Source: Vitrella brassicaformis CCMP3155 (Eukaryota; Protista; Chromerida). From it: a DNA stretch of 9,140 nt. The stretch is taken from assembly GCA_001179505.1 (NCBI GenBank), contig CDMY01000945.1, positions 1 to 9,140 on the forward strand. The letters are read 5' to 3'. Of the stretch, positions 2,140 through 9,140 are shown piece by piece. A program made the translations under genes and the position numbers. The notes beneath the pieces were generated by a model. The model had not been told where the DNA came from. It was given only the letters and a program-made list of their open reading frames with translations, and did no database searches. Positions within the stretch are counted from its first letter, which is position 1, and each line of letters starts with the position of its first letter.

Positions 2140-2380
2140 GAGGCATGATGTTGATACCAGCATGACCGCGTCTCCGTCCTGAGCAACATGGGCGTCACAG
2201 ATTGTCCGTACGAGGTCAAGATCACGAGATCTGATCTCCCCAACAAGACATTAGGGCGGCCATTGCGCAGCAACCACGGCGAATGAGCTCTCGATGAGTC
2301 AGCCATTTTGACCGCCCTGACGCACTGACTCATTCATCTGCCCCTCTCGACCCCGCCCTCCCTCTCCCTCCCCCTGCAGC

Positions 2381-2597
2381 GACCCACCTGAGGTCTGCCA
2401 ATCACTTCCCCCTCTGCCGCACATCGACCGCCGGCGCCATCGCGTCCTCTCCCGCAGCGCCGCATACAAGACGTCCGGCTGGCTGACCACCCTCCCATCG
2501 ACAGACAACAACACTGGTCTTGATGCTGCGGAGTTTCGAGATGCCCTCAACATGCGATACGGCCGTCACCCCCCTGGCCTCGCTGCACGCTGCGAGC
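2381..2597 (+). mobile_element. Fragment of the post-RT C-terminal region of a CRE-like (restriction-like endonuclease) non-LTR retrotransposon, cut by the gap
   Basis: An open frame not fully shown in the ORF track reads DPPEVCQSLPPLPHIDRRRHRVLSRSAAYKTSGWLTTLPSTDNNTGLDAAEFRDALNMRYGRHPPGLAARCE(gap). SGWLTxLP...EFRDALxxRYG...C is the pattern I recall just before the CCHC zinc knuckle of CRE-type elements. No RT motifs are seen upstream. Confidence 0.65.
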
Positions 2598-2897
2598 NNN
2601 NNNNNNNNNNNNNNNNNNNNNNNNNNNNNNNNNNNNNNNNNNNNNNNNNNNNNNNNNNNNNNNNNNNNNNNNNNNNNNNNNNNNNNNNNNNNNNNNNNNN
2701 NNNNNNNNNNNNNNNNNNNNNNNNNNNNNNNNNNNNNNNNNNNNNNNNNNNNNNNNNNNNNNNNNNNNNNNNNNNNNNNNNNNNNNNNNNNNNNNNNNNN
2801 NNNNNNNNNNNNNNNNNNNNNNNNNNNNNNNNNNNNNNNNNNNNNNNNNNNNNNNNNNNNNNNNNNNNNNNNNNNNNNNNNNNNNNNNNNNNNNNNN
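2598..2897. other. Assembly gap (300 N)
   Basis: Run of N. ORFs that cross it are artefacts. Confidence 1.
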
Positions 2898-3191
2898 GCA
2901 CACTTTTCATTGTCAACTCTTCCCCCATCCCCTCACTCAGGTTGATTGTTGGTCGTTTTCTCGGCGAATTGCAGATGCCGCCGGCCTCTCTGTAGAGCAT
3001 GACTGAGGCCACCGAACGCACTATCATCTGAGGTACACACATGAGGGCACACAGGGCATCCACATCTATATATGTACAGCCAAATATGGATATGTATACA
3101 TACATACATACTGTGTTTGCTCTGTGCTGCTGTGTGGTGTGCTGCGGTGTGCAGGTGTGCAGGTGTGTGGTGTGTAGTTCTGTCGTGGTGG
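2898..3191 (+). repeat. Left inverted repeat (294 bp visible)
   Basis: Begins GCACACTTTTCATTGTCAAC and ends ...GTTCTGTCGTGGTGG. It differs from the right copy by 3 substitutions and an extra GTGTGCAG (8 bp) near 3155-3162. Confidence 0.95.
2941..3032 (+). other. Putative non-coding 5'-UTR exon inside the left repeat (mirror copy 9097-9006 on the - strand)
   Basis: A pyrimidine tract and CAG acceptor end at 2940. A GAG|GTACAC donor starts at 3033, followed by an intron-like CA/GT-rich stretch ending in GTGTGCAG (3154 or 3162). All three frames of the exon contain stops. The next long-ORF ATG is at 3253 (left) and 8852 (right). Confidence 0.55.
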
Positions 3192-3252
3192 CTCACGCGG
3201 TGGTGGCTGTTGCCATCGCTTCAGTTACTTTGTTGATCGTTCATCACTCGCT

Positions 3253-4554
3253 ATGGAGGCCCAGCAATACCTGCACCGCCCCAGAGCTGACGGCACGAGG
3301 GACGTGACGGTTCTGAAGAAGAATGGAGACATGGTGACAGTCAGCATCCCGCGAGCCCTGTCTGACGACATGAAGAAACAGCTGACGGGCCGAGCGGCTG
3401 ACTCCACACTGGACAACATGCTGCTGTCTGGGTGGGTTGGTATCCGGCGATATGGCCATGGGCTGGGAGATTGGCTGAAGCGGCATCGAGCCGTCTATCT
3501 GCGGTTTGTTCCCACCATGGACGAATCTGCCAGATCCACTCTTCCACGCAGCCTCTCAACTGATGAGCTCCAGCAGCTTGTCGACGAGGCCCACCGGTGT
3601 GTGCCTGACTTGGGTATCGATCCCGTCGCCAGCCACCCCTCCGCCCTGCGTCTTGATAGAGGAGTGATCGAGCATGAGGTCCTGATGGCACTGGAGAGCG
3701 ATGAGCCCTTCCCACTGCTGCGGTCGCTGGGGCTGGAGGACCTCCTCTTGTCCAACCACGCCCAGTACAGCTCGAAGATCCCAGCCATCCCACCAGCACC
3801 ATCGCGGCGCAGGAGACGTGACAGTGGTGACGACGATGACAGCCACCGCCCGTCGAGGAGACGTGCTTCTCGTCTGCCGGCCGTCGCCGCACACCCATCT
3901 CGCCAGCCCAAGAGAAAGGCGAGGTCTCCTGCCCTCGATCCAGCTTTCCCGCAGATTTCCAGTCCACTGAGGAAAGTGCCGTCTCCTGAGCGGGACAAGG
4001 GGAGGGACGTCGCTGCGGCTGCTGCTGCTGCCCGAGGCCGATCTCCGCCCCTATCGCCTCAGCCAATGGACGAAGATCCTCCCCCACCGGCAGCCGCTGC
4101 TGCTGCTGCTGCCTCTGTCGTCATGCCCAAGGCTGCCCCGGCCCGTCCGTCAGCCGCGGCGCCGGCTGCCAGACGCCTCCCTTCCCCTCCTCCCTGGGCT
4201 GTCCATCCGCAGCCGGCCGCATTGGCGTCTCCTCTGCGTCGATCGAACCCCCCACCACCAGCAGCTGCATCTCCGGAGAGGTCCCGTTTCTCGCGTCCGC
4301 TGCAATCTCCTGCCTCTCCCCCACCACCACCACCACCGCTGCTGTCTCCCCCACCATCACCACCGCCAGCAGCAGCAGCAGCAGCAGCCCGCCAGCCCCG
4401 GCCTGCCGGCCCTTCTGTGCACTCGGTCGACCTATTCTACGACTCTGACGAGGGCGAGGCGGAAGAGGACGAAAGCGACAGGGATGAAGAGTCACATGTT
4501 GGCGGAGATTATCCCGTGTGTGTTCGACCCTTCCGCCCAGCTGCCGTGGCTTGA
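3253..4554 (+). CDS. 433-aa ORF: a ~175-aa unrecognised N-terminal domain followed by Pro/Ala/Ser-rich and acidic low-complexity sequence; probably the N-terminal part of the transposase gene
   Basis: Long ORF starting 62 bp inside the left repeat boundary. It overlaps the transposase frame around 4430-4554. A 43-nt (4498-4540) or 25-nt (4516-4540) GT..AG intron would fuse the two frames. Confidence 0.6.
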   Translation: MEAQQYLHRPRADGTRDVTVLKKNGDMVTVSIPRALSDDMKKQLTGRAADSTLDNMLLSGWVGIRRYGHGLGDWLKRHRAVYLRFVPTMDESARSTLPRSLSTDELQQLVDEAHRCVPDLGIDPVASHPSALRLDRGVIEHEVLMALESDEPFPLLRSLGLEDLLLSNHAQYSSKIPAIPPAPSRRRRRDSGDDDDSHRPSRRRASRLPAVAAHPSRQPKRKARSPALDPAFPQISSPLRKVPSPERDKGRDVAAAAAAARGRSPPLSPQPMDEDPPPPAAAAAAAASVVMPKAAPARPSAAAPAARRLPSPPPWAVHPQPAALASPLRRSNPPPPAAASPERSRFSRPLQSPASPPPPPPPLLSPPPSPPPAAAAAAARQPRPAGPSVHSVDLFYDSDEGEAEEDESDRDEESHVGGDYPVCVRPFRPAAVA

Positions 4555-7187
4555 GAGGGACGGCGAGGGAGGCGGCGAGGGGGCTGCTGCCGCGCCCCCT
4601 GAGGGTGGATGGATGAGTGATCAGATATCCCTTGACAACTCAGTCGACGGGATCGTGTCTGCCCTGGTCGACTTCTTGTTCTGGATGCCGGCGGAGGGTT
4701 TCCAGGACTTTATGCGTCGACTGTGGACGGTGTATCAGGAGCGGCACGCCGGGCGGCTGGTGTCCACCTCGACACGGCTGAAGGCACTGGAGGCGGGCTT
4801 CAACAAGCTGGCCGTGCTTTACGCCGACCACACATGGCAGGTGCCATGGAGCGTCTGGAAGTCGGTGACTCTCGCGACCAAGAGCAGCCAGAAGAAGACA
4901 CAGGTCTTCCGCAACATCCTCACCGGCCGCTTCGATCATCAGCGAAGGCGGTGGTTTCGAGACTTCACGCGGCCCTCCATCGTGCCGAGCGAGAAGGTCG
5001 TGAGGGGGGAGATGGACAGCCTGTTGAAGATCGTGGTGAAGGATGAGCAGGCGGTCGGTGCTGCCGACATGGGCGACGATGAGGCTCACCGACAGCTCGG
5101 ACGTCTCCCTGACCCAAACACGCTGGAGTTCTATGTGCCGCCGAAGGAGAAGGGCAAGTCCTTCGGCAACACATGGGTCGATCCTGCCGACATGTTCTTC
5201 CGCTTGTTCACTGACCATCCAGCCATCCTTTCGGAGTGTCTCGGCATCACTCTGCCGAAGAGACCTCGCGGCAGCCGCGAGCCACCGACGATCGACTTGG
5301 ACGCGTGCTTCTCAGGCGACGGCAGCATCTTTGCGAGAAGCAGGCACAACGCACAGGTTTGCTCACTTTGTTTGTTGTTTCTGTGTGTTGTTTGTCTCTT
5401 CCACAGGCTGTGACACTCGCCATTCGCTTGCTGCCAAGTGAGGTCAGCCGTGAGAAGCCGGAGCCCCAGTTTTCCGCCAACTCGTTCGAGGCGGTCTTTC
5501 CCTGTCTGCTGGTTTACGGCAGCGAGAAGTGGGAGTCTCTGCTGCCCTACAAGGCGCGGCTCAACAGTGCACTCAGGAGGATGAAGGAGGGAGTGGAGCT
5601 GACCATCAACGGGCGCACCTATCGTCTCAGATTTCATTTCTGCGCAACGTCTGACCAGGTAAGACAGTCACCCATTCCACTCACTGTGAGTCACTGTGTA
5701 CGTGTGTCTGTGTGCTGTGTGTAGTGTGTGCAGAAGTTTCACTCGATCCAGATGGGCCACGTCGGGCCGTCTGGCAACTTCGGTTGCCAGTTTTGCTTCA
5801 CTCACAAGGACCACTACAACAGTGAGCTGCTCGCCCTCCATTACCTCGGCTCTCCCATCGACCCAATCGCGGCCGTCGCACGCCCTCCCACCCGCACAGT
5901 CGCGGCAATGAAGCAACGGGCCGCCATCAGCGAGTCCAACAACGGTTGCTGGTTTTGTTTTCATGTCTGGACTCTCAGAGTGGTTGGACGAGCGGGGGAT
6001 CCAAGTGCGATTTCTACCTGTCATCTGCAAGACGCACCCACGTCAGACACACCACAAAAAGGAAGCCGCACGCACCCGTCATTTCTCATTCTCGGTCTGC
6101 GTGATTGATGCAGCGGCCACCGTCAACCCAGCTGGAGCAACGGCCAACCCTCGGGCTGACCTGCTCGAGTTCGTGGATGATGATCTCTTCGACGAGATGG
6201 ACCCGGCCGCCATGGCACGCGAGGCGGCCGAGAACAAGGCCATTCTGGGCGAGACGACCCTGGTGCTGGAGCTTTTGAACGGGCGCCTGCATGCCCGCGA
6301 CATCAAGAGGTGGGTGGACGACATGGTGTCGTTCATGGAGCTCTTCGAGCAGTTGGACGAGTCGAGGACCAGCAGCTTCCATGTGCTTCTCGAGAGCTAC
6401 GCTTGGGTGTGGCCCTTCCTTCTGCGGTCTTGCAAGTCGACGGAGAAGCAGCAGGCGCTGTTCCGGACGGCTATCTGGCAGATCAGGATGGCAGCTGTCG
6501 AGAGGTGAGGCGTCAGCAGCTCCATTCAATCAACCCATGTATGTGTGCTGCTTGTGTGTTTGTCAGCCTCGGTTGGGGCGACATCTTTAGCCAGCCGTCC
6601 TTCCACCTCCTCATGTGCCACTCCTTGTATGGTGCCGTCATCACAGCCGCAAGCCCATCGGTGTGTCGAGCAACATGAACGCCCATGAGTCCATGAACCA
6701 CCAGCTGCACGAGATATTCGAGCGACAGACGATGAAGGGCGGCGGAACAAGTGACAAGACCACCCTTCCCGTCGCCGCCATCTCTCAGTCCGCCTCTCGT
6801 CTGCTGCTCGCCTCCAAGGGGCGAATCGAGCAGTGGGTGTTTTGCAACGCGGCCAGCAAGAAGAGCACAAGGATGCTGCCCCAAGACGAGTACGACAAGC
6901 CGCTCCCGCGCCTCAGGAGGTTCGTCATCGAGAGGCGGAGCCGCAACCCACAAGGCGTGCATCAGGGCGGCATGACGGAGCCCACTGCTGAGTGGTGGGC
7001 CGAGCGGCTCGACACCGCCCGACAGTTGTATGAGAGGGGTGACTTTTCTCGGTCGCGCCAGGAACTCGAGCAACGGGCAGCAGACCAGGCCGCTGCCAAG
7101 GCCAAGGCCAAGGCAATGGCTAAGATCAAGACCAAGGCCAAGGCAAAGGCTAAGGTCAAGGGCGCCAAGGGTGCCACGGATCGATGA
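4484..7187 (+). CDS. RAG1/Transib-type DDE transposase core; exons ~4484/4541-5356, 5407-5658, 5734-6004, 6114-6504, 6567-7187, with a probable 1-bp frameshift at ~6622-6646
   Basis: Introns 5357-5406, 5659-5733, 6005-6113 and 6505-6566 are GT..AG and phase-consistent. Motifs: FSGDG (D 5318-5320); ATSD|QKFHSIQMGHVGPSGNFGCQFC (D 5653-5655; K+2, G+9, C+19, C+22, the same offsets as RAG1 [23 protein letters not shown]); FHLLMCH (HxxxxH, 6604-6621); KPIGVSSNMNAHESMNH (E 6687-6689; compare Transib PIGxLSEEAQEARNK). In this model D-D is 95 aa and D-E about 263 aa. The C-terminus is an Ala-Lys repeat. Confidence 0.8.
7095..7169 (+). repeat. GCCAAG-type coding repeat giving the basic tail AKAKAKAMAKIKTKAKAKAKVKGAK
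   Basis: Hexamer periodicity is visible in the DNA and in the translation of ORF 6615-7187. Confidence 0.85.
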
Positions 7188-7231
7188 GTGAGGAGTTCGA
7201 CAGGCCTTGTTTGAGTGTCATGTGTGTTGGC

Positions 7232-7549
7232 GAGTGAGTGAGTGAGTCAGTGGCTGATTGAGCCGTTGAGCGAATGAATTGACTCACACCCATTGTGATT
7301 GACCTTGTGCACATGTCTGTACAGCGATGGATGCAATCAACACGTCATGCAATCAACACGTCATGAAATCAACGCGTCCCACCCACCTACCATCAATCAT
7401 CCACATCTAGTGATAGACAGGCCATCTGAGTGTAATTTGTGTTTGTGATTGAGTGAGTGACCGAGTGAGTGGCTAATTGATCCGTTGAGCGGATGGATTG
7501 ACTCACACACATATCTGTACAGCGTCATGAATCCACACGTCATGAAATC
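7232..7549. repeat. Diverged direct duplication and 16-bp tandem repeat in the spacer between the two convergent genes
   Basis: 7249-7289 and 7468-7508 match at 37 of 41 positions, with further shared TCTGTACAGCG and CACGTCATGAAATC blocks. ATGCAATCAACACGTC occurs three times at 7331-7378 (third copy degenerate). Confidence 0.8.
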
Positions 7550-7618
7550 CATGCATGGATGGACACGTACGGACGTCCAATCAGTCGCCACCCATCCGCC
7601 CACCCACCCAACCAGGCC

Positions 7619-8852
7619 TCAACCATCCCCATCTATCATCTCTTGGTTCTGGTTCGCGGCTGCCAGCATCTCTTGCTCTCTAGGATCCACCTCTCCCTCC
7701 GGCATGTGCGCGCCCATGAAGGCGGGCACTTCCTCGTCAGCCTGAGGATCCTCTCCCTCCCCATCGGCCTCCTCATCCTCCTGACCCTCGTCTTGGTCCT
7801 CCATGGCATCAGCTGCCGCAGCCAGCGCGTCGACCTGCACATACTCGACATGATAGTGGAAGTTGAGCTCGACGATGGGTTGGGTGAGGCGCAGGGGCGA
7901 GACTTTGATGACCAAGGGCTTCTCAGGTGTGACAACCAGCCGCATCTGCACACACACATACAGACACAGACACAGACACAGACAGACACAGACACAAGGG
8001 TGATGGTCTGACAGTGGTGATGTGTGTGTGTGTGTGTCAGGATGGTGTGAATGACCGTCTGATCGCTGCCGTTCTTCAACCTAATCGTCCGGCCCTCGAG
8101 GCATCGCGTGCTGTTCAGTAGCCTACCGACGAGCCCGGCTACTTCCCCACCATCCCCGCCCGCCTCGCCCGCCCCGCCCTCTCCGTTGATGACGACGGCC
8201 GACCACACTGCAGTGGCGTCGACGATCGCATCATCACTGCCCAGCAGCGCCCGCCGCTCCTCGTCACGCTTGATCTTGTCCAGCCTGTCGCGGCTCCACA
8301 TGAGCGTCACGCTCATGGCGGGGCGGGCTGAGCCGCCTGGCCCTCGGCATTCGGCAGAGCCGAATGGCGTAAGAACCACCTGGCTAGGATCACGGCGTCA
8401 TGGGCGCTGGCGGACGGGGCGATGCGTCTGACCTTTCCCTCCATCACCACCCCATCGCCGTGCAGCTGAGAGGGCTGGACCGGGACGAGCTTCGACCCGC
8501 GTGGGCAGGGACGGCCGAACAATGCCCACATCTTCTTCTCCCCGTTGTTGAAGACGGAGAAGAGGGAGGACAGGTCCCTGTACAGCTGTGGGTCGCCCCC
8601 CTCTCTCGCTCGCTGGAGAGTGGCCGCCCATCCGCCGTCGAGCACCTGCCCGTCCTTGAGGAAGTCGAGGCTCCCGACTGACGAGTGCGGGTTGCTGGGG
8701 CGGCGGTGCTGCTTCTCGACCTTCGGGTAGAGGGAGGGGAACCGCCGCATGGCGGCAGACGTGCCGTTGCGCGTGAAGGAGGAGAGGGGTGGCTTGCCCT
8801 CCTTGGCGCGTTGCAGGTTGCGCCGTGGTGCGAGTGGAGGATCCTCGTTCAT
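7619..8852 (-). CDS. Unrecognised ~356-aa transposon accessory protein with an acidic C-terminal tail; exons 8852-8433, 8379-8056, 7945-7619
   Basis: The ATG lies 3 bp inside the right repeat boundary. Phase-0 GT..AG introns 8432-8380 (53 nt) and 8055-7946 (microsatellite-rich) give a stop-free product: MNEDPPLAPRRNLQ...MEGK|VVLTPFGS...GSDQT|MRLVVTPEKPLVIKVSPLRLTQPIVELNFHYHVEYVQVD...EDQDEGQEDEEADGEGEDPQADEE...IDGDG*. I recognise no domain. Confidence 0.65.
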
Positions 8853-8854
8853 CT

Positions 8855-9140
8855 CCACCACGACAGAACTACACACCACACACCTGCACACCGCAGCACA
8901 CCACACAGCAGCACAGAGCAAACACAGCATGTATGTATGTATACATATCCATATTTGGCTGTACATATATGGATGTGGATGCCCTGTGTGCCCTCATGTG
9001 TGTACCTCAGATGATAGTGCGTTCGGTGGCCTCAGTCATGCTCTACAGAGAGGCCGGCGGCATCCGCAATTCGCCGAGAAAACGACCAACAATCAACCTG
9101 AGTGAGGGGATGGGGGAAGAGTTGACAATGAAAAGTGTGC
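8855..9140 (-). repeat. Right inverted repeat (286 bp visible)
   Basis: Ends ...GTTGACAATGAAAAGTGTGC, the exact reverse complement of 2898 onward. Confidence 0.95.

What the first reader, a model, noticed from the sequence alone, without database searches (positions are those of the whole stretch)
2898..9140. ProtoRAG-like architecture: a RAG1-type transposase and a convergent partner gene between long inverted repeats, in an apparently non-animal genome
Seen: two spliced genes point tail-to-tail between near-identical inverted repeats; one has a RAG1/Transib catalytic core and the other is an unknown protein with an acidic tail. Known: Transib elements usually carry a single transposase, whereas ProtoRAG/RAGL elements of invertebrates carry RAG1L and RAG2L tail-to-tail. 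Inference: this may be an undescribed two-component RAG1-like transposon family with an independently recruited partner, relevant to how RAG1-type enzymes acquire cofactors. The host assignment to a protist rests only on intron style.
Basis: partly seen in the sequence, partly recalled or inferred. Interest (0 to 1): 0.9.

Follow-up and report, generated by a model that had tools for sequence, protein, structure and literature searches.

The report
Two-gene RAG1-like transposon in alga
The alga Vitrella brassicaformis, a relative of malaria parasites, carries a damaged jumping gene whose cutting enzyme is a very distant relative of the immune enzyme RAG1 and sits next to an unknown second gene; that partner does not resemble RAG2, so only the layout recalls the RAG ancestor.

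Summary
The window is a whole 9,140-nt scaffold of Vitrella brassicaformis. Arms 2898-3191 and 8855-9140 are inverted repeats (3 substitutions, one 8-nt indel). They enclose two convergent, spliced, transcribed genes.

The + strand gene has D..D-19-CxxC..CxxH..HxxxxH..ESxN. HMMER finds no RAG1 match in Pfam or the PDB. A 27%-identical paralogue (P0001) lands on RAG1 clusters in the ESM Atlas (0.96; TM about 0.6), and four blocks match a published bacterial Transib by eye. These motifs are shared by the whole CMCT clade, so Transib proper is likely, not proven.

The partner (P0004, 366 aa, acidic tail) has no relatives and no Kelch signal. A second subfamily (L001/L003) also has it tail-to-tail (BLASTP 1e-6), so it belongs to the family.

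Every copy seen is broken. Here a frameshift, also present in the RNA, stops the enzyme before its catalytic E. The termini and target-site duplication cannot be seen: one arm abuts a gap, the other ends the scaffold, and paralogues share sequence beyond the left arm.

RAG-like transposons are already known in a protist (Aureococcus), and two-gene layouts in CACTA and MuDR. Earlier notes of this scan flagged related genes elsewhere in this genome. Verdict: a new variant of a known kind, of moderate interest.

The parts
2898..3191 (+). Left inverted-repeat arm (294 nt). Its outer end abuts the N gap. It ends 62 nt before the transposase ATG.
   Evidence: junction contigs
8855..9140 (-). Right inverted-repeat arm (286 nt). 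Its outer end is the scaffold end. It ends 3 nt before the partner ATG.
   Evidence: scaffold length
3253..4497 (+). Transposase exon 1: a small N-terminal part followed by about 350 aa of Pro/Ala-rich and acidic low complexity. Its link to exon 2, by a 43-nt GT..AG intron (4498-4540) or by a frameshift, is inferred.
   Evidence: paralogue P0001 has a similar long disordered N-terminus in one ORF
4541..5356 (+). Transposase exon 2 (272 aa): the region before the RNase H fold, up to the first catalytic Asp (SGDGS, 5312-5326).
5407..5658 (+). Transposase exon 3 (84 aa), ending in the second catalytic Asp (TSDQ, 5647-5658).
5734..5944 (+). Transposase exon 4 (70 aa), with CxxC (CQFC, 5785-5796) 19 residues after the second Asp.
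5979..6504 (+). Transposase exon 5 (175 aa): the CKTH motif (6026-6037), an acidic linker and helices. It is about 65 aa shorter after the C/DxxH motif than the type B copy. The 34-nt intron before it is inferred.
6567..7187 (+). Transposase last exon: HLLMCH (6604-6621) in frame 1, a frameshift near 6640-6660, then AHESMN (catalytic Glu, 6681-6698), TMKGGG, DEYDKPLP and a Lys/Ala tail in frame 3. As transcribed, the ORF stops at 6676-6678.
   Evidence: RNA contig with intron 6505-6566 removed and no gap over 6565-6802
7188..7618 (.). Tail-to-tail spacer holding both 3' ends. It has a 73-nt direct repeat (7221-7293 and 7440-7512) and four copies of a 16-nt unit (7331-7378 and 7530-7554).
8433..8852 (-). 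Partner exon 1 (140 aa).
   Evidence: homology to the type B partner
8056..8379 (-). Partner exon 2 (108 aa).
   Evidence: RNA contigs
7619..7945 (-). Partner exon 3 (108 aa plus stop): a strand-rich start followed by an acidic tail.
   Evidence: RNA contig joins 7945 to 8056
2598..2897 (.). Scaffold gap of 300 N that hides whatever lies outside the left arm.

Best explanation
This is a defective copy of a cut-and-paste DNA transposon family of Vitrella brassicaformis. The transposase belongs to the RAG1-like (CMCT) group of DDE enzymes, most probably the Transib superfamily.

The family carries a second, family-specific gene in convergent orientation. In this copy each gene starts just inside one arm of a roughly 290-nt inverted repeat. 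I infer that the repeat carries the promoters and 5' UTRs, and possibly the transposase binding sites.

Inferred mechanism: an intact enzyme would bind the element's ends, use the D-D-E site held together by a Cys2-His2 zinc site, and cut and re-insert the element. The partner would act as a helper or regulator.

Shown: the repeats, both spliced transcripts, the motifs, the partner's conservation in a second subfamily, and the damage. Inferred: that the repeats are the functional ends, that the partner works with the enzyme, and the chemistry.

As transcribed, this copy makes a 1,053-aa protein that lacks the catalytic Glu. It could move only with help from another copy, and none of the three other loci I read was intact.
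For: 1. Family. phmmer of exon 2 against 1.84 billion proteins finds only two Vitrella proteins. tblastn links the window to P0001 at 5e-35 and to P0003 at 7e-16.

2. RAG1-likeness. P0001 residues 280-660 hit RAG1 clusters first (PF26025, PF26100, PF26101) with score 0.96 and 194 of 256 shared features. Predicted-structure TM is 0.58-0.60 over 283-299 residues against RAG1 models. No CACTA-type Pfam family appears among the listed sets.

3. Motif order and spacing. The family gives D1-D2 95, D2-Cys 19, His-His 5 and His-Glu about 23-26. Mouse RAG1 gives 108, 19, 5 and 20 from D600, D708, C727, C730, H937, H942 and E962 (PMC4914335).

4. Match to a published Transib. By eye, four blocks match bacterial CthTransib_0091 from the supplement of PMC9435367:
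- LTGDGTQ against ISGDGSQ / FSGDGSI
- GGDWKFLALICGL..C..C against LGDQKWIGLILGL..C..C
- DSLHLFLRISD against DILHIILRSD
- MHAFAMH..E against MHLLECH..E

5. Partner. P0004 against the type B partner gives BLASTP 1e-6. The match is collinear and stops at the exon 2 / intron 2 border. The position is the same tail-to-tail one in L001 and L003.

6. Signs of mobility.
- IR-like contigs at 88-93% identity, and arm depth about 5 times that of the interior.
- Contigs in which an IR-like piece is joined through 7-10 nt of filler to short remnants of the partner gene, the pattern of internally deleted derivatives.
- Type B exists as two 97%-identical copies, one with a clean 1,555-nt internal deletion.

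7. Both genes are transcribed and spliced.
Against: - No HMMER-level similarity to RAG1 or Transib in Pfam at E up to 10, nor to PDB chains, which I assume from my own knowledge include RAG1, ProtoRAG and HzTransib.
- Both AlphaFold models were too poor to use (pLDDT 40 and 37).
- The Atlas score was not calibrated for parts of proteins, and its own model of P0001 has pLDDT 0.49.
- C(2)C and H(3-4)H are shared by the whole CMCT clade.
- Termini and target-site duplication are unseen.
- A roughly 290-nt repeat is much longer than the 38-bp Transib ends (PMC1131882).
- The type B copy shows no comparable repeat within the flanks available.
- Paralogous contigs share sequence to the left of the left arm (2348-2412 and, more diverged, further left), so 2898 may not be the end of the mobile unit.
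- The interior is single-copy at 95% identity or more.
Confidence: 0.68

Rival explanations
1. The transposase belongs to another lineage of the CMCT clade (EnSpm/CACTA, Chapaev, Mirage, ESTA, Plavaka, Lanisha, or a new one) rather than to Transib. The two-gene layout would then be the ordinary one of such elements.
For: [quoted passage not shown] The visible outer end reads GCACAC, and most CMCT elements start with 5'-CA. Twenty-seven of the 100 nearest Atlas clusters have no family name and could be such lineages.
Against: No CACTA-type Pfam family is hit at E up to 10, and none is listed among the nearest named Atlas sets. The D.LH..LR.SD block and the ESxN after the catalytic Glu match the bacterial Transib and RAG1. 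My recollection, unverified here, is that plant CACTA enzymes instead carry a D.MH.EKN block.
Confidence: 0.25
2. The inverted repeats are not transposon ends. They would be a local inverted duplication of a promoter region, or part of a larger repeated block. The gene pair would then be a relic or a host-retained pair rather than a bounded mobile unit.
For: The outer ends are hidden by the gap and the scaffold end. An RNA contig links a copy of 2348-2412 to an IR-like piece with only 138 nt between them, and the paralogue's similarity goes on to the left of 2348. No such repeat is found around type B. The interior is single-copy. Both genes are expressed although the enzyme is broken.
Against: The arms are 99% alike while the family's subfamilies are only 25-40% alike in protein. 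IR-like sequences occur in several diverged copies. At least one copy is joined to remnants of the partner gene through filler, as in deletion derivatives of DNA transposons. The assembler stopped both contig ends at the same base of the repeat, as expected if the flanks diverge there.
Confidence: 0.25
3. The partner is a RAG2-like protein diverged beyond recognition, which would make this a true RAG-like (RAGL) transposon of an alveolate.
For: The orientation is convergent, as in ProtoRAG (PMC10462144). Size is about 290 aa before an acidic stretch, which I recall RAG2 also has after its propeller. RAGL exists in another protist.
Against: There is no Kelch or other Pfam hit at E up to 10. The type B partner's nearest Atlas neighbours score only 0.70, and the PDB profile search gives only chance-level hits. 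None of the GG doublets that recur in AanRAG2L are seen. The low-confidence model mixes helices and strands. The transposase lacks the RING and CCHC-tail features of RAG1L.
Confidence: 0.05
4. The palindromic contig ends are an assembly artefact.
For: Both arms stop at exactly the same base, one at a gap and one at the scaffold end.
Against: The arms differ at 3 sites and by an 8-nt indel. Both variants, and both inner junctions, are found in independent assemblies of three DNA runs from different studies.
Confidence: 0.03

Closest known systems
Transib superfamily, especially the bacterial / subgroup I type (CthTransib_0091; Tao et al. 2022, PMC9435367)
   Same: A D-D-E enzyme with Cys-x2-Cys 19 residues after the second Asp, a D/C-x2-His block, His-x4-His and a Glu followed by x-x-Asn. 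Four blocks are alike by eye. The nearest named Atlas clusters are RAG1.
   Different: No HMMER-detectable similarity. A long disordered N-terminus, introns, and no CCHC tail (CTT1). A second gene is present. The repeats are about 290 nt against 38-bp heptamer-spacer-nonamer ends. The 5-bp duplication is unknown. The host is an alveolate, from which I found no Transib report.
ProtoRAG / RAGL transposons, including AanRAGL of the pelagophyte Aureococcus (PMC9435367; PMC10462144)
   Same: Two genes between inverted repeats, tail-to-tail as in ProtoRAG, with a RAG1-like enzyme. The visible end starts G-CACAC and the AanRAGL end starts CACACCCAAACCT.
   Different: The partner shows no Kelch / RAG2 signal. 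There is no RING finger or CCHC tail. AanRAGL has RAG2L upstream in the same direction and single-exon genes. Termini and duplication are not defined here.
CACTA/EnSpm and the wider CMCT clade (PMC12730594)
   Same: The C(2)C and H(4)H motifs. Ends usually begin with 5'-CA. Elements often carry a further gene (TET/JBP genes per PMC12730594; TnpA from my own knowledge).
   Different: No hit to CACTA-type Pfam families. The partner is unrelated to TET/JBP by Pfam. The motif blocks look closer to Transib.
MuDR of maize (Mutator superfamily)
   Same: Two genes, a transposase (mudrA) and a helper of unclear function (mudrB) (PMC6446971). From my own knowledge, not checked here, they are transcribed convergently from promoters inside long, nearly identical terminal repeats of about 200 nt. 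That is the same layout as seen here.
   Different: An unrelated transposase superfamily with 9-bp duplications. This is a likeness of layout only.

Membership tests
CMCT clade (RAG1-like DDE transposases) | [quoted passage not shown] | tested here: met
   CQFC lies 19 residues after the D of TSDQ. HLLMCH precedes AHESMN. The same motifs occur in P0001 and L003. Definition from PMC12730594.
CMCT clade (RAG1-like DDE transposases) | 5'-CA..TG-3' termini and 2-5 bp target-site duplications | not testable with these tools
   The outer ends are hidden by the N gap and the scaffold end. The visible end reads GCACAC. One contig runs 146 nt further out, but the two flanks cannot be paired.
Transib superfamily | Significant sequence or fold similarity of the transposase to Transib / RAG1 core | tested here: inconclusive
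   HMMER is negative against Pfam and the PDB. The Atlas features score 0.96 with 194/256 shared and TM 0.58-0.60 to RAG1 for the paralogue P0001. Four blocks match CthTransib_0091 by eye. The AlphaFold model was unusable.
Transib superfamily | 5-bp target-site duplication | not testable with these tools
   No copy with both flanks is available.
Transib superfamily | Short ends with a CACAATG-like heptamer, a spacer and an A-rich nonamer | tested here: inconclusive
   The visible end is G-CACACTTTTCATTG, but it may not be the true end.
RAGL / ProtoRAG | A RAG2-like (six-bladed Kelch) partner gene | tested here: not met
   No Kelch or other Pfam family at E up to 10. Atlas neighbours score 0.70 for the type B partner. 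The PDB profile search gives chance-level hits only. No GG-doublet repeats like those in AanRAG2L. The fold itself is unresolved (pLDDT 37).
RAGL / ProtoRAG | Convergent RAG1L and RAG2L genes between inverted ends | tested here: met
   Layout only: the genes run tail-to-tail between 99%-alike repeats.
RAGL / ProtoRAG | RAG1L-type additions: N-terminal zinc/RING region and a CTT1 (CCHC) tail | tested here: not met
   No Cys-rich N-terminus and no Pfam hit. The C-terminus is a Lys/Ala tail here and a plain tail in L003. CTT1 as described in PMC9435367.
CACTA / EnSpm | Transposase matching the CACTA-type Pfam families (which I recall as Transposase_21 and its companions) | tested here: not met
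   No hit at E up to 10 for any piece or paralogue.

The most novel reading that the evidence does not exclude
A Transib-type enzyme in an alveolate recruited its own obligatory cofactor, unrelated to RAG2. The pair has been kept together through a divergence deep enough to leave only 25-40% identity in the enzyme. It would be a second, independent origin of a two-subunit RAG1-like transposase.
Probability: 0.2. Interest if true: 0.8.

Novelty: new variant of a known kind. Interest (0 to 1): 0.5.

Why it matters
How RAG1 came to depend on RAG2 is an open question in the origin of V(D)J recombination. Current models posit a single capture of a RAG2-like gene by a Transib (PMC9435367; PMC10462144).

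A RAG1-like transposase lineage that keeps a different partner gene in the same tail-to-tail position would give an independent case for asking why such enzymes take on cofactors. I found no report of Transib or RAG-like elements from alveolates, so it would also extend their known range.

The value is limited for three reasons. All copies seen are broken. The partner's function and fold are unknown. Placement inside Transib rather than a sister CMCT lineage is not yet proven.

Tried and rejected
- Pfam scans of all exons, paralogues and the partner, at E up to 1 or up to 10: no relevant family; the only hits were three sub-threshold DUF matches to read-through or left-flank ORFs.
- phmmer and profile searches of PDB chains with exons, P0001, family profiles and the partner profile: no RAG1 or Transib hit, only chance hits.
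- Word-seeded homology search with the exon 2 ORF: nothing. With the family profile: only Vitrella proteins.
- AlphaFold2 of the P0001 core with a 6-row alignment (pLDDT 40) and of the partner with 2 rows (pLDDT 37). Both were unusable, and Foldseek against the PDB gave noise.
- Atlas search with the window's own exon 2: not informative.
- Scans of JGI metagenomes for the repeat's end and for relatives of the C-terminal block: nothing.
- Two scans of bacterial and archaeal genomes meant to fetch the published bacterial Transib for a scored comparison: nothing. That comparison therefore stayed by eye.
- Is the repeat the 3' tail of the very high-copy repeat at 2413-2597? Rejected: that repeat is 20-50 times deeper than the arms.
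- Does an alternative acceptor restore the frame to the catalytic Glu? Rejected: the RNA contig uses the acceptor at 6566/6567, and that route would skip HLLMCH.
- Is a frame-1 reading at 6067-6105 the C/DxxH block? Rejected in favour of CKTH in frame 2.
- Search for inverted repeats around the type B copy: none.
Full report
WHAT THE WINDOW IS

The window is a complete 9,140-nt scaffold of Vitrella brassicaformis CCMP3155, a photosynthetic relative of apicomplexans. The database protein that matches the partner gene is named for that organism, and its longest contig is 9,140 nt. Paralogues come from assembly GCA_001179505.1.

The scaffold is two contigs joined by 300 N (2598-2897). The finding occupies the whole second contig.

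THE INVERTED REPEATS

- The arms are 2898-3191 and 8855-9140. They differ at three bases and by one unit of a GGTGTGCA repeat.
- In three DNA runs from different studies, independent contigs cross the inner junction on the transposase side (3162-3228). They also read from position 3191 straight into the partner's start codon. Both arm variants are seen. The repeat is therefore real.
- Its outer ends are not visible. One arm abuts the gap and the other is the scaffold end.
- Both contig ends stop at the same base of the repeat. That is what an assembler does when the two flanks diverge there.
- However, one contig runs 146 nt further out.
- In addition, an RNA contig from a paralogous locus joins a copy of 2348-2412 to an IR-like piece with only 138 nt between them. 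The similarity continues, more diverged, to the left of 2348.
- The stretch 2413-2597 is a fragment of a very high-copy repeat, 150 or more times the single-copy depth. It looks inserted between those two pieces.
- So the mobile or repeated unit may reach beyond 2898. Whether the arms are the functional termini is unproven.

THE GENES

Transposase (+ strand):
- I read exons 3253-4497, 4541-5356, 5407-5658, 5734-5944, 5979-6504 and 6567-7187. All introns are GT..AG.
- Intron 6505-6566 is removed in an RNA contig.
- Junctions 5356|5407 and 5658|5734 are confirmed because the paralogue P0001 reads across them in one piece.
- The 43-nt and 34-nt introns are inferred.
- The same RNA contig reads 6565-6802 without any gap. 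The frameshift between HLLMCH (frame 1) and AHESMN (frame 3) is therefore real. As transcribed, the protein is 1,053 aa and ends at 6676-6678, before the catalytic Glu.

Partner (- strand):
- Exons are 8852-8433, 8379-8056 and 7945-7619.
- An RNA contig joins 7945 to 8056.
- The deposited protein P0004 has exactly these exons.

Each gene starts just inside an arm, 62 nt and 3 nt from its inner edge. The arms probably hold the promoters and 5' UTRs; this is an inference.

WHAT THE ENZYME IS

Sequence searches fail. There is no relevant Pfam family, even at E up to 10, and no PDB chain. phmmer of exon 2 against 1.84 billion proteins finds only two Vitrella proteins.

Three lines of evidence nevertheless point to the RAG1-like group.

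1. Atlas neighbours. For the paralogue P0001 (702 aa; 25-27% identical to the window, tblastn 5e-35), the ESM Atlas features place residues 280-660 next to RAG1 clusters (PF26025, PF26100, PF26101). The score is 0.96 with 194 of 256 shared features. Its Atlas model aligns to RAG1 models at TM 0.58-0.60 over 283-299 residues. Further neighbours are unnamed cnidarian, arthropod and fungal clusters, and no CACTA-type family is listed.

2. Spacing of the ligands (against mouse RAG1 residues from PMC4914335):

| Interval | Vitrella family | Mouse RAG1 |
|---|---|---|
| D1 to D2 | 95 | 108 |
| D2 to first Cys | 19 | 19 |
| His to His | 5 | 5 |
| His to Glu | 23-26 | 20 |

3. Match to a published Transib. 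The supplement of Tao et al. 2022 prints the bacterial CthTransib_0091 protein. By eye the family matches it in four blocks, around each Asp, the D-x-L-H block and the His pair with the Glu. One example is GGDWKFLALICGL against LGDQKWIGLILGL.

I could not score this comparison.

[quoted passage not shown] ESTA also hits RAG1 in HHpred. Membership of the clade is therefore safe. Membership of Transib proper is likely but not shown.

THE FAMILY AND ITS STATE

A second subfamily (type B) is spread over two loci.
- L001 holds the N-terminus to CxxC, and the partner.
- L003 is a 2,983-nt contig with the rest of the enzyme and the partner's last exon.
- The two are 97% identical where they overlap. 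L001 has a clean 1,555-nt internal deletion.
- L003 has lost the second Asp through a 10-nt deletion. It also has a frameshift near 1750 and a stop at 1833. The deposited model P0003 reads through the wrong frame there and skips the His-pair exon.

L002 is an N-terminal fragment among retroelement genes.

Relative to type B, the window copy also lacks about 65 residues after the C/DxxH block. Every copy I could read is therefore defective.

Signs of past mobility:
- IR-like contigs at 88-93% identity, and arm depth about five times that of the interior.
- Contigs in which an IR-like piece is joined through 7-10 nt of filler to 30-nt remnants of the partner gene, the pattern of internally deleted derivatives.

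Earlier notes of this scan report further RAG1/Transib-like relics in other pieces of this genome. I did not check those.

THE PARTNER

- P0004 has 366 aa (356 from the ATG) and ends in an acidic tail.
- It has no Pfam family and no PDB relative above chance.
- The type B partner's nearest Atlas clusters score only 0.70.
- The AlphaFold model is unusable (pLDDT 37).
- It shows none of the GG doublets that recur in the published Aureococcus RAG2-like protein.
- It is nonetheless conserved. P0004 against the type B partner gives BLASTP 1e-6 over 214 residues. The match is collinear and ends exactly at the exon 2 / intron 2 border.
- Type B also has a last exon with a strand-rich start, an acidic run and a shared [FY]MGA..EVD motif. 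That exon is not significant by BLASTP.
- The gene sits tail-to-tail after the transposase in both subfamilies.
- It is therefore a component of the family and not a chance neighbour. Its function is unknown; a helper or regulator of transposition is the natural guess.

COMPARISON WITH WHAT IS KNOWN

- The layout recalls ProtoRAG. The defining RAG2-like gene, the RING region and the CCHC tail were tested and not found.
- Convergent or two-gene layouts also occur elsewhere. MuDR has mudrA and mudrB (PMC6446971). From my own knowledge, CACTA elements also encode two proteins.
- A RAG-like transposon in a protist is already published (Aureococcus, with RAG2L upstream in the same direction).
- Transib is known from bacteria, fungi, plants and many animals.
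- I found no mention of Vitrella, Chromera or alveolates in that paper's supplements, and no paper holding both "Vitrella" and "Transib".
- The chromerid genome paper lists only unclassified class 2 elements.

VERDICT

This is a real, very divergent, two-gene member of the RAG1-like transposon group in an alveolate, with an orphan partner. It is defective and its ends are undefined. I rate it a new variant of a known kind, of moderate interest. It would become high interest if the partner proves to be an independently recruited cofactor.

Noticed in passing
window 2413-2597: Fragment of a very high-copy repeat: summed contig depth is 8,000-14,000 against about 56 for single-copy DNA in run X1, and also high in the RNA run. 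It translates to ...AEFRDALNMRYGRHPPGL..., which I recall as a motif of the C-terminal part of non-LTR retrotransposon ORF2 proteins. Pfam gave no hit. It seems to be inserted between 2412 and the sequence leading into the left arm.
   Followed up: partly
window 7572-7601, 8522-8555 and 8963-9034 (contigs): A contig present in three DNA runs and the RNA run joins an IR-like piece (93% identity) to 34 nt of partner exon 1 and 30 nt of the partner's 3' end, through 10-nt and 7-nt fillers. It looks like an internally deleted, possibly transcribed, derivative of the element at another locus.
   Followed up: partly
window 2348-2412 and 2940-3032: A 296-nt RNA contig from a paralogous locus holds copies of both stretches only 138 nt apart. 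Transcription there runs from outside the repeat into it, and the paralogue shares sequence beyond the repeat's outer edge.
   Followed up: partly
window 7221-7554: The spacer between the two 3' ends holds a 73-nt direct repeat (82% identity) and four copies of a 16-nt unit, ATGCAATCAACACGTC. Their function is unknown.
   Followed up: no
L003 623-2339 (protein P0003) and L001 275-2438 (P0001): The deposited gene models of the type B copies are wrong in places. P0003 reads about 30 residues in a shifted frame and skips the exon with the His pair. P0001 ends in intron or deleted sequence.
   Followed up: yes
window 7085-7170: The transposase reading frame ends in a Lys/Ala repeat (AKAKAKAMAKIKTKAKAKAKVK), encoded by a GCCAAG hexamer array. 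The type B copy lacks it.
   Followed up: no
window 4498-4540 and 5945-5978: The two proposed introns are only 43 and 34 nt long. If they are not spliced, the gene has two more frameshifts. No RNA contig covers them.
   Followed up: no
L001 2859-3158 / 3827-4126 and 3323-3526 / 4921-5124: Direct repeats of 99% identity lie on either side of N gaps around the type B partner.
   Followed up: partly
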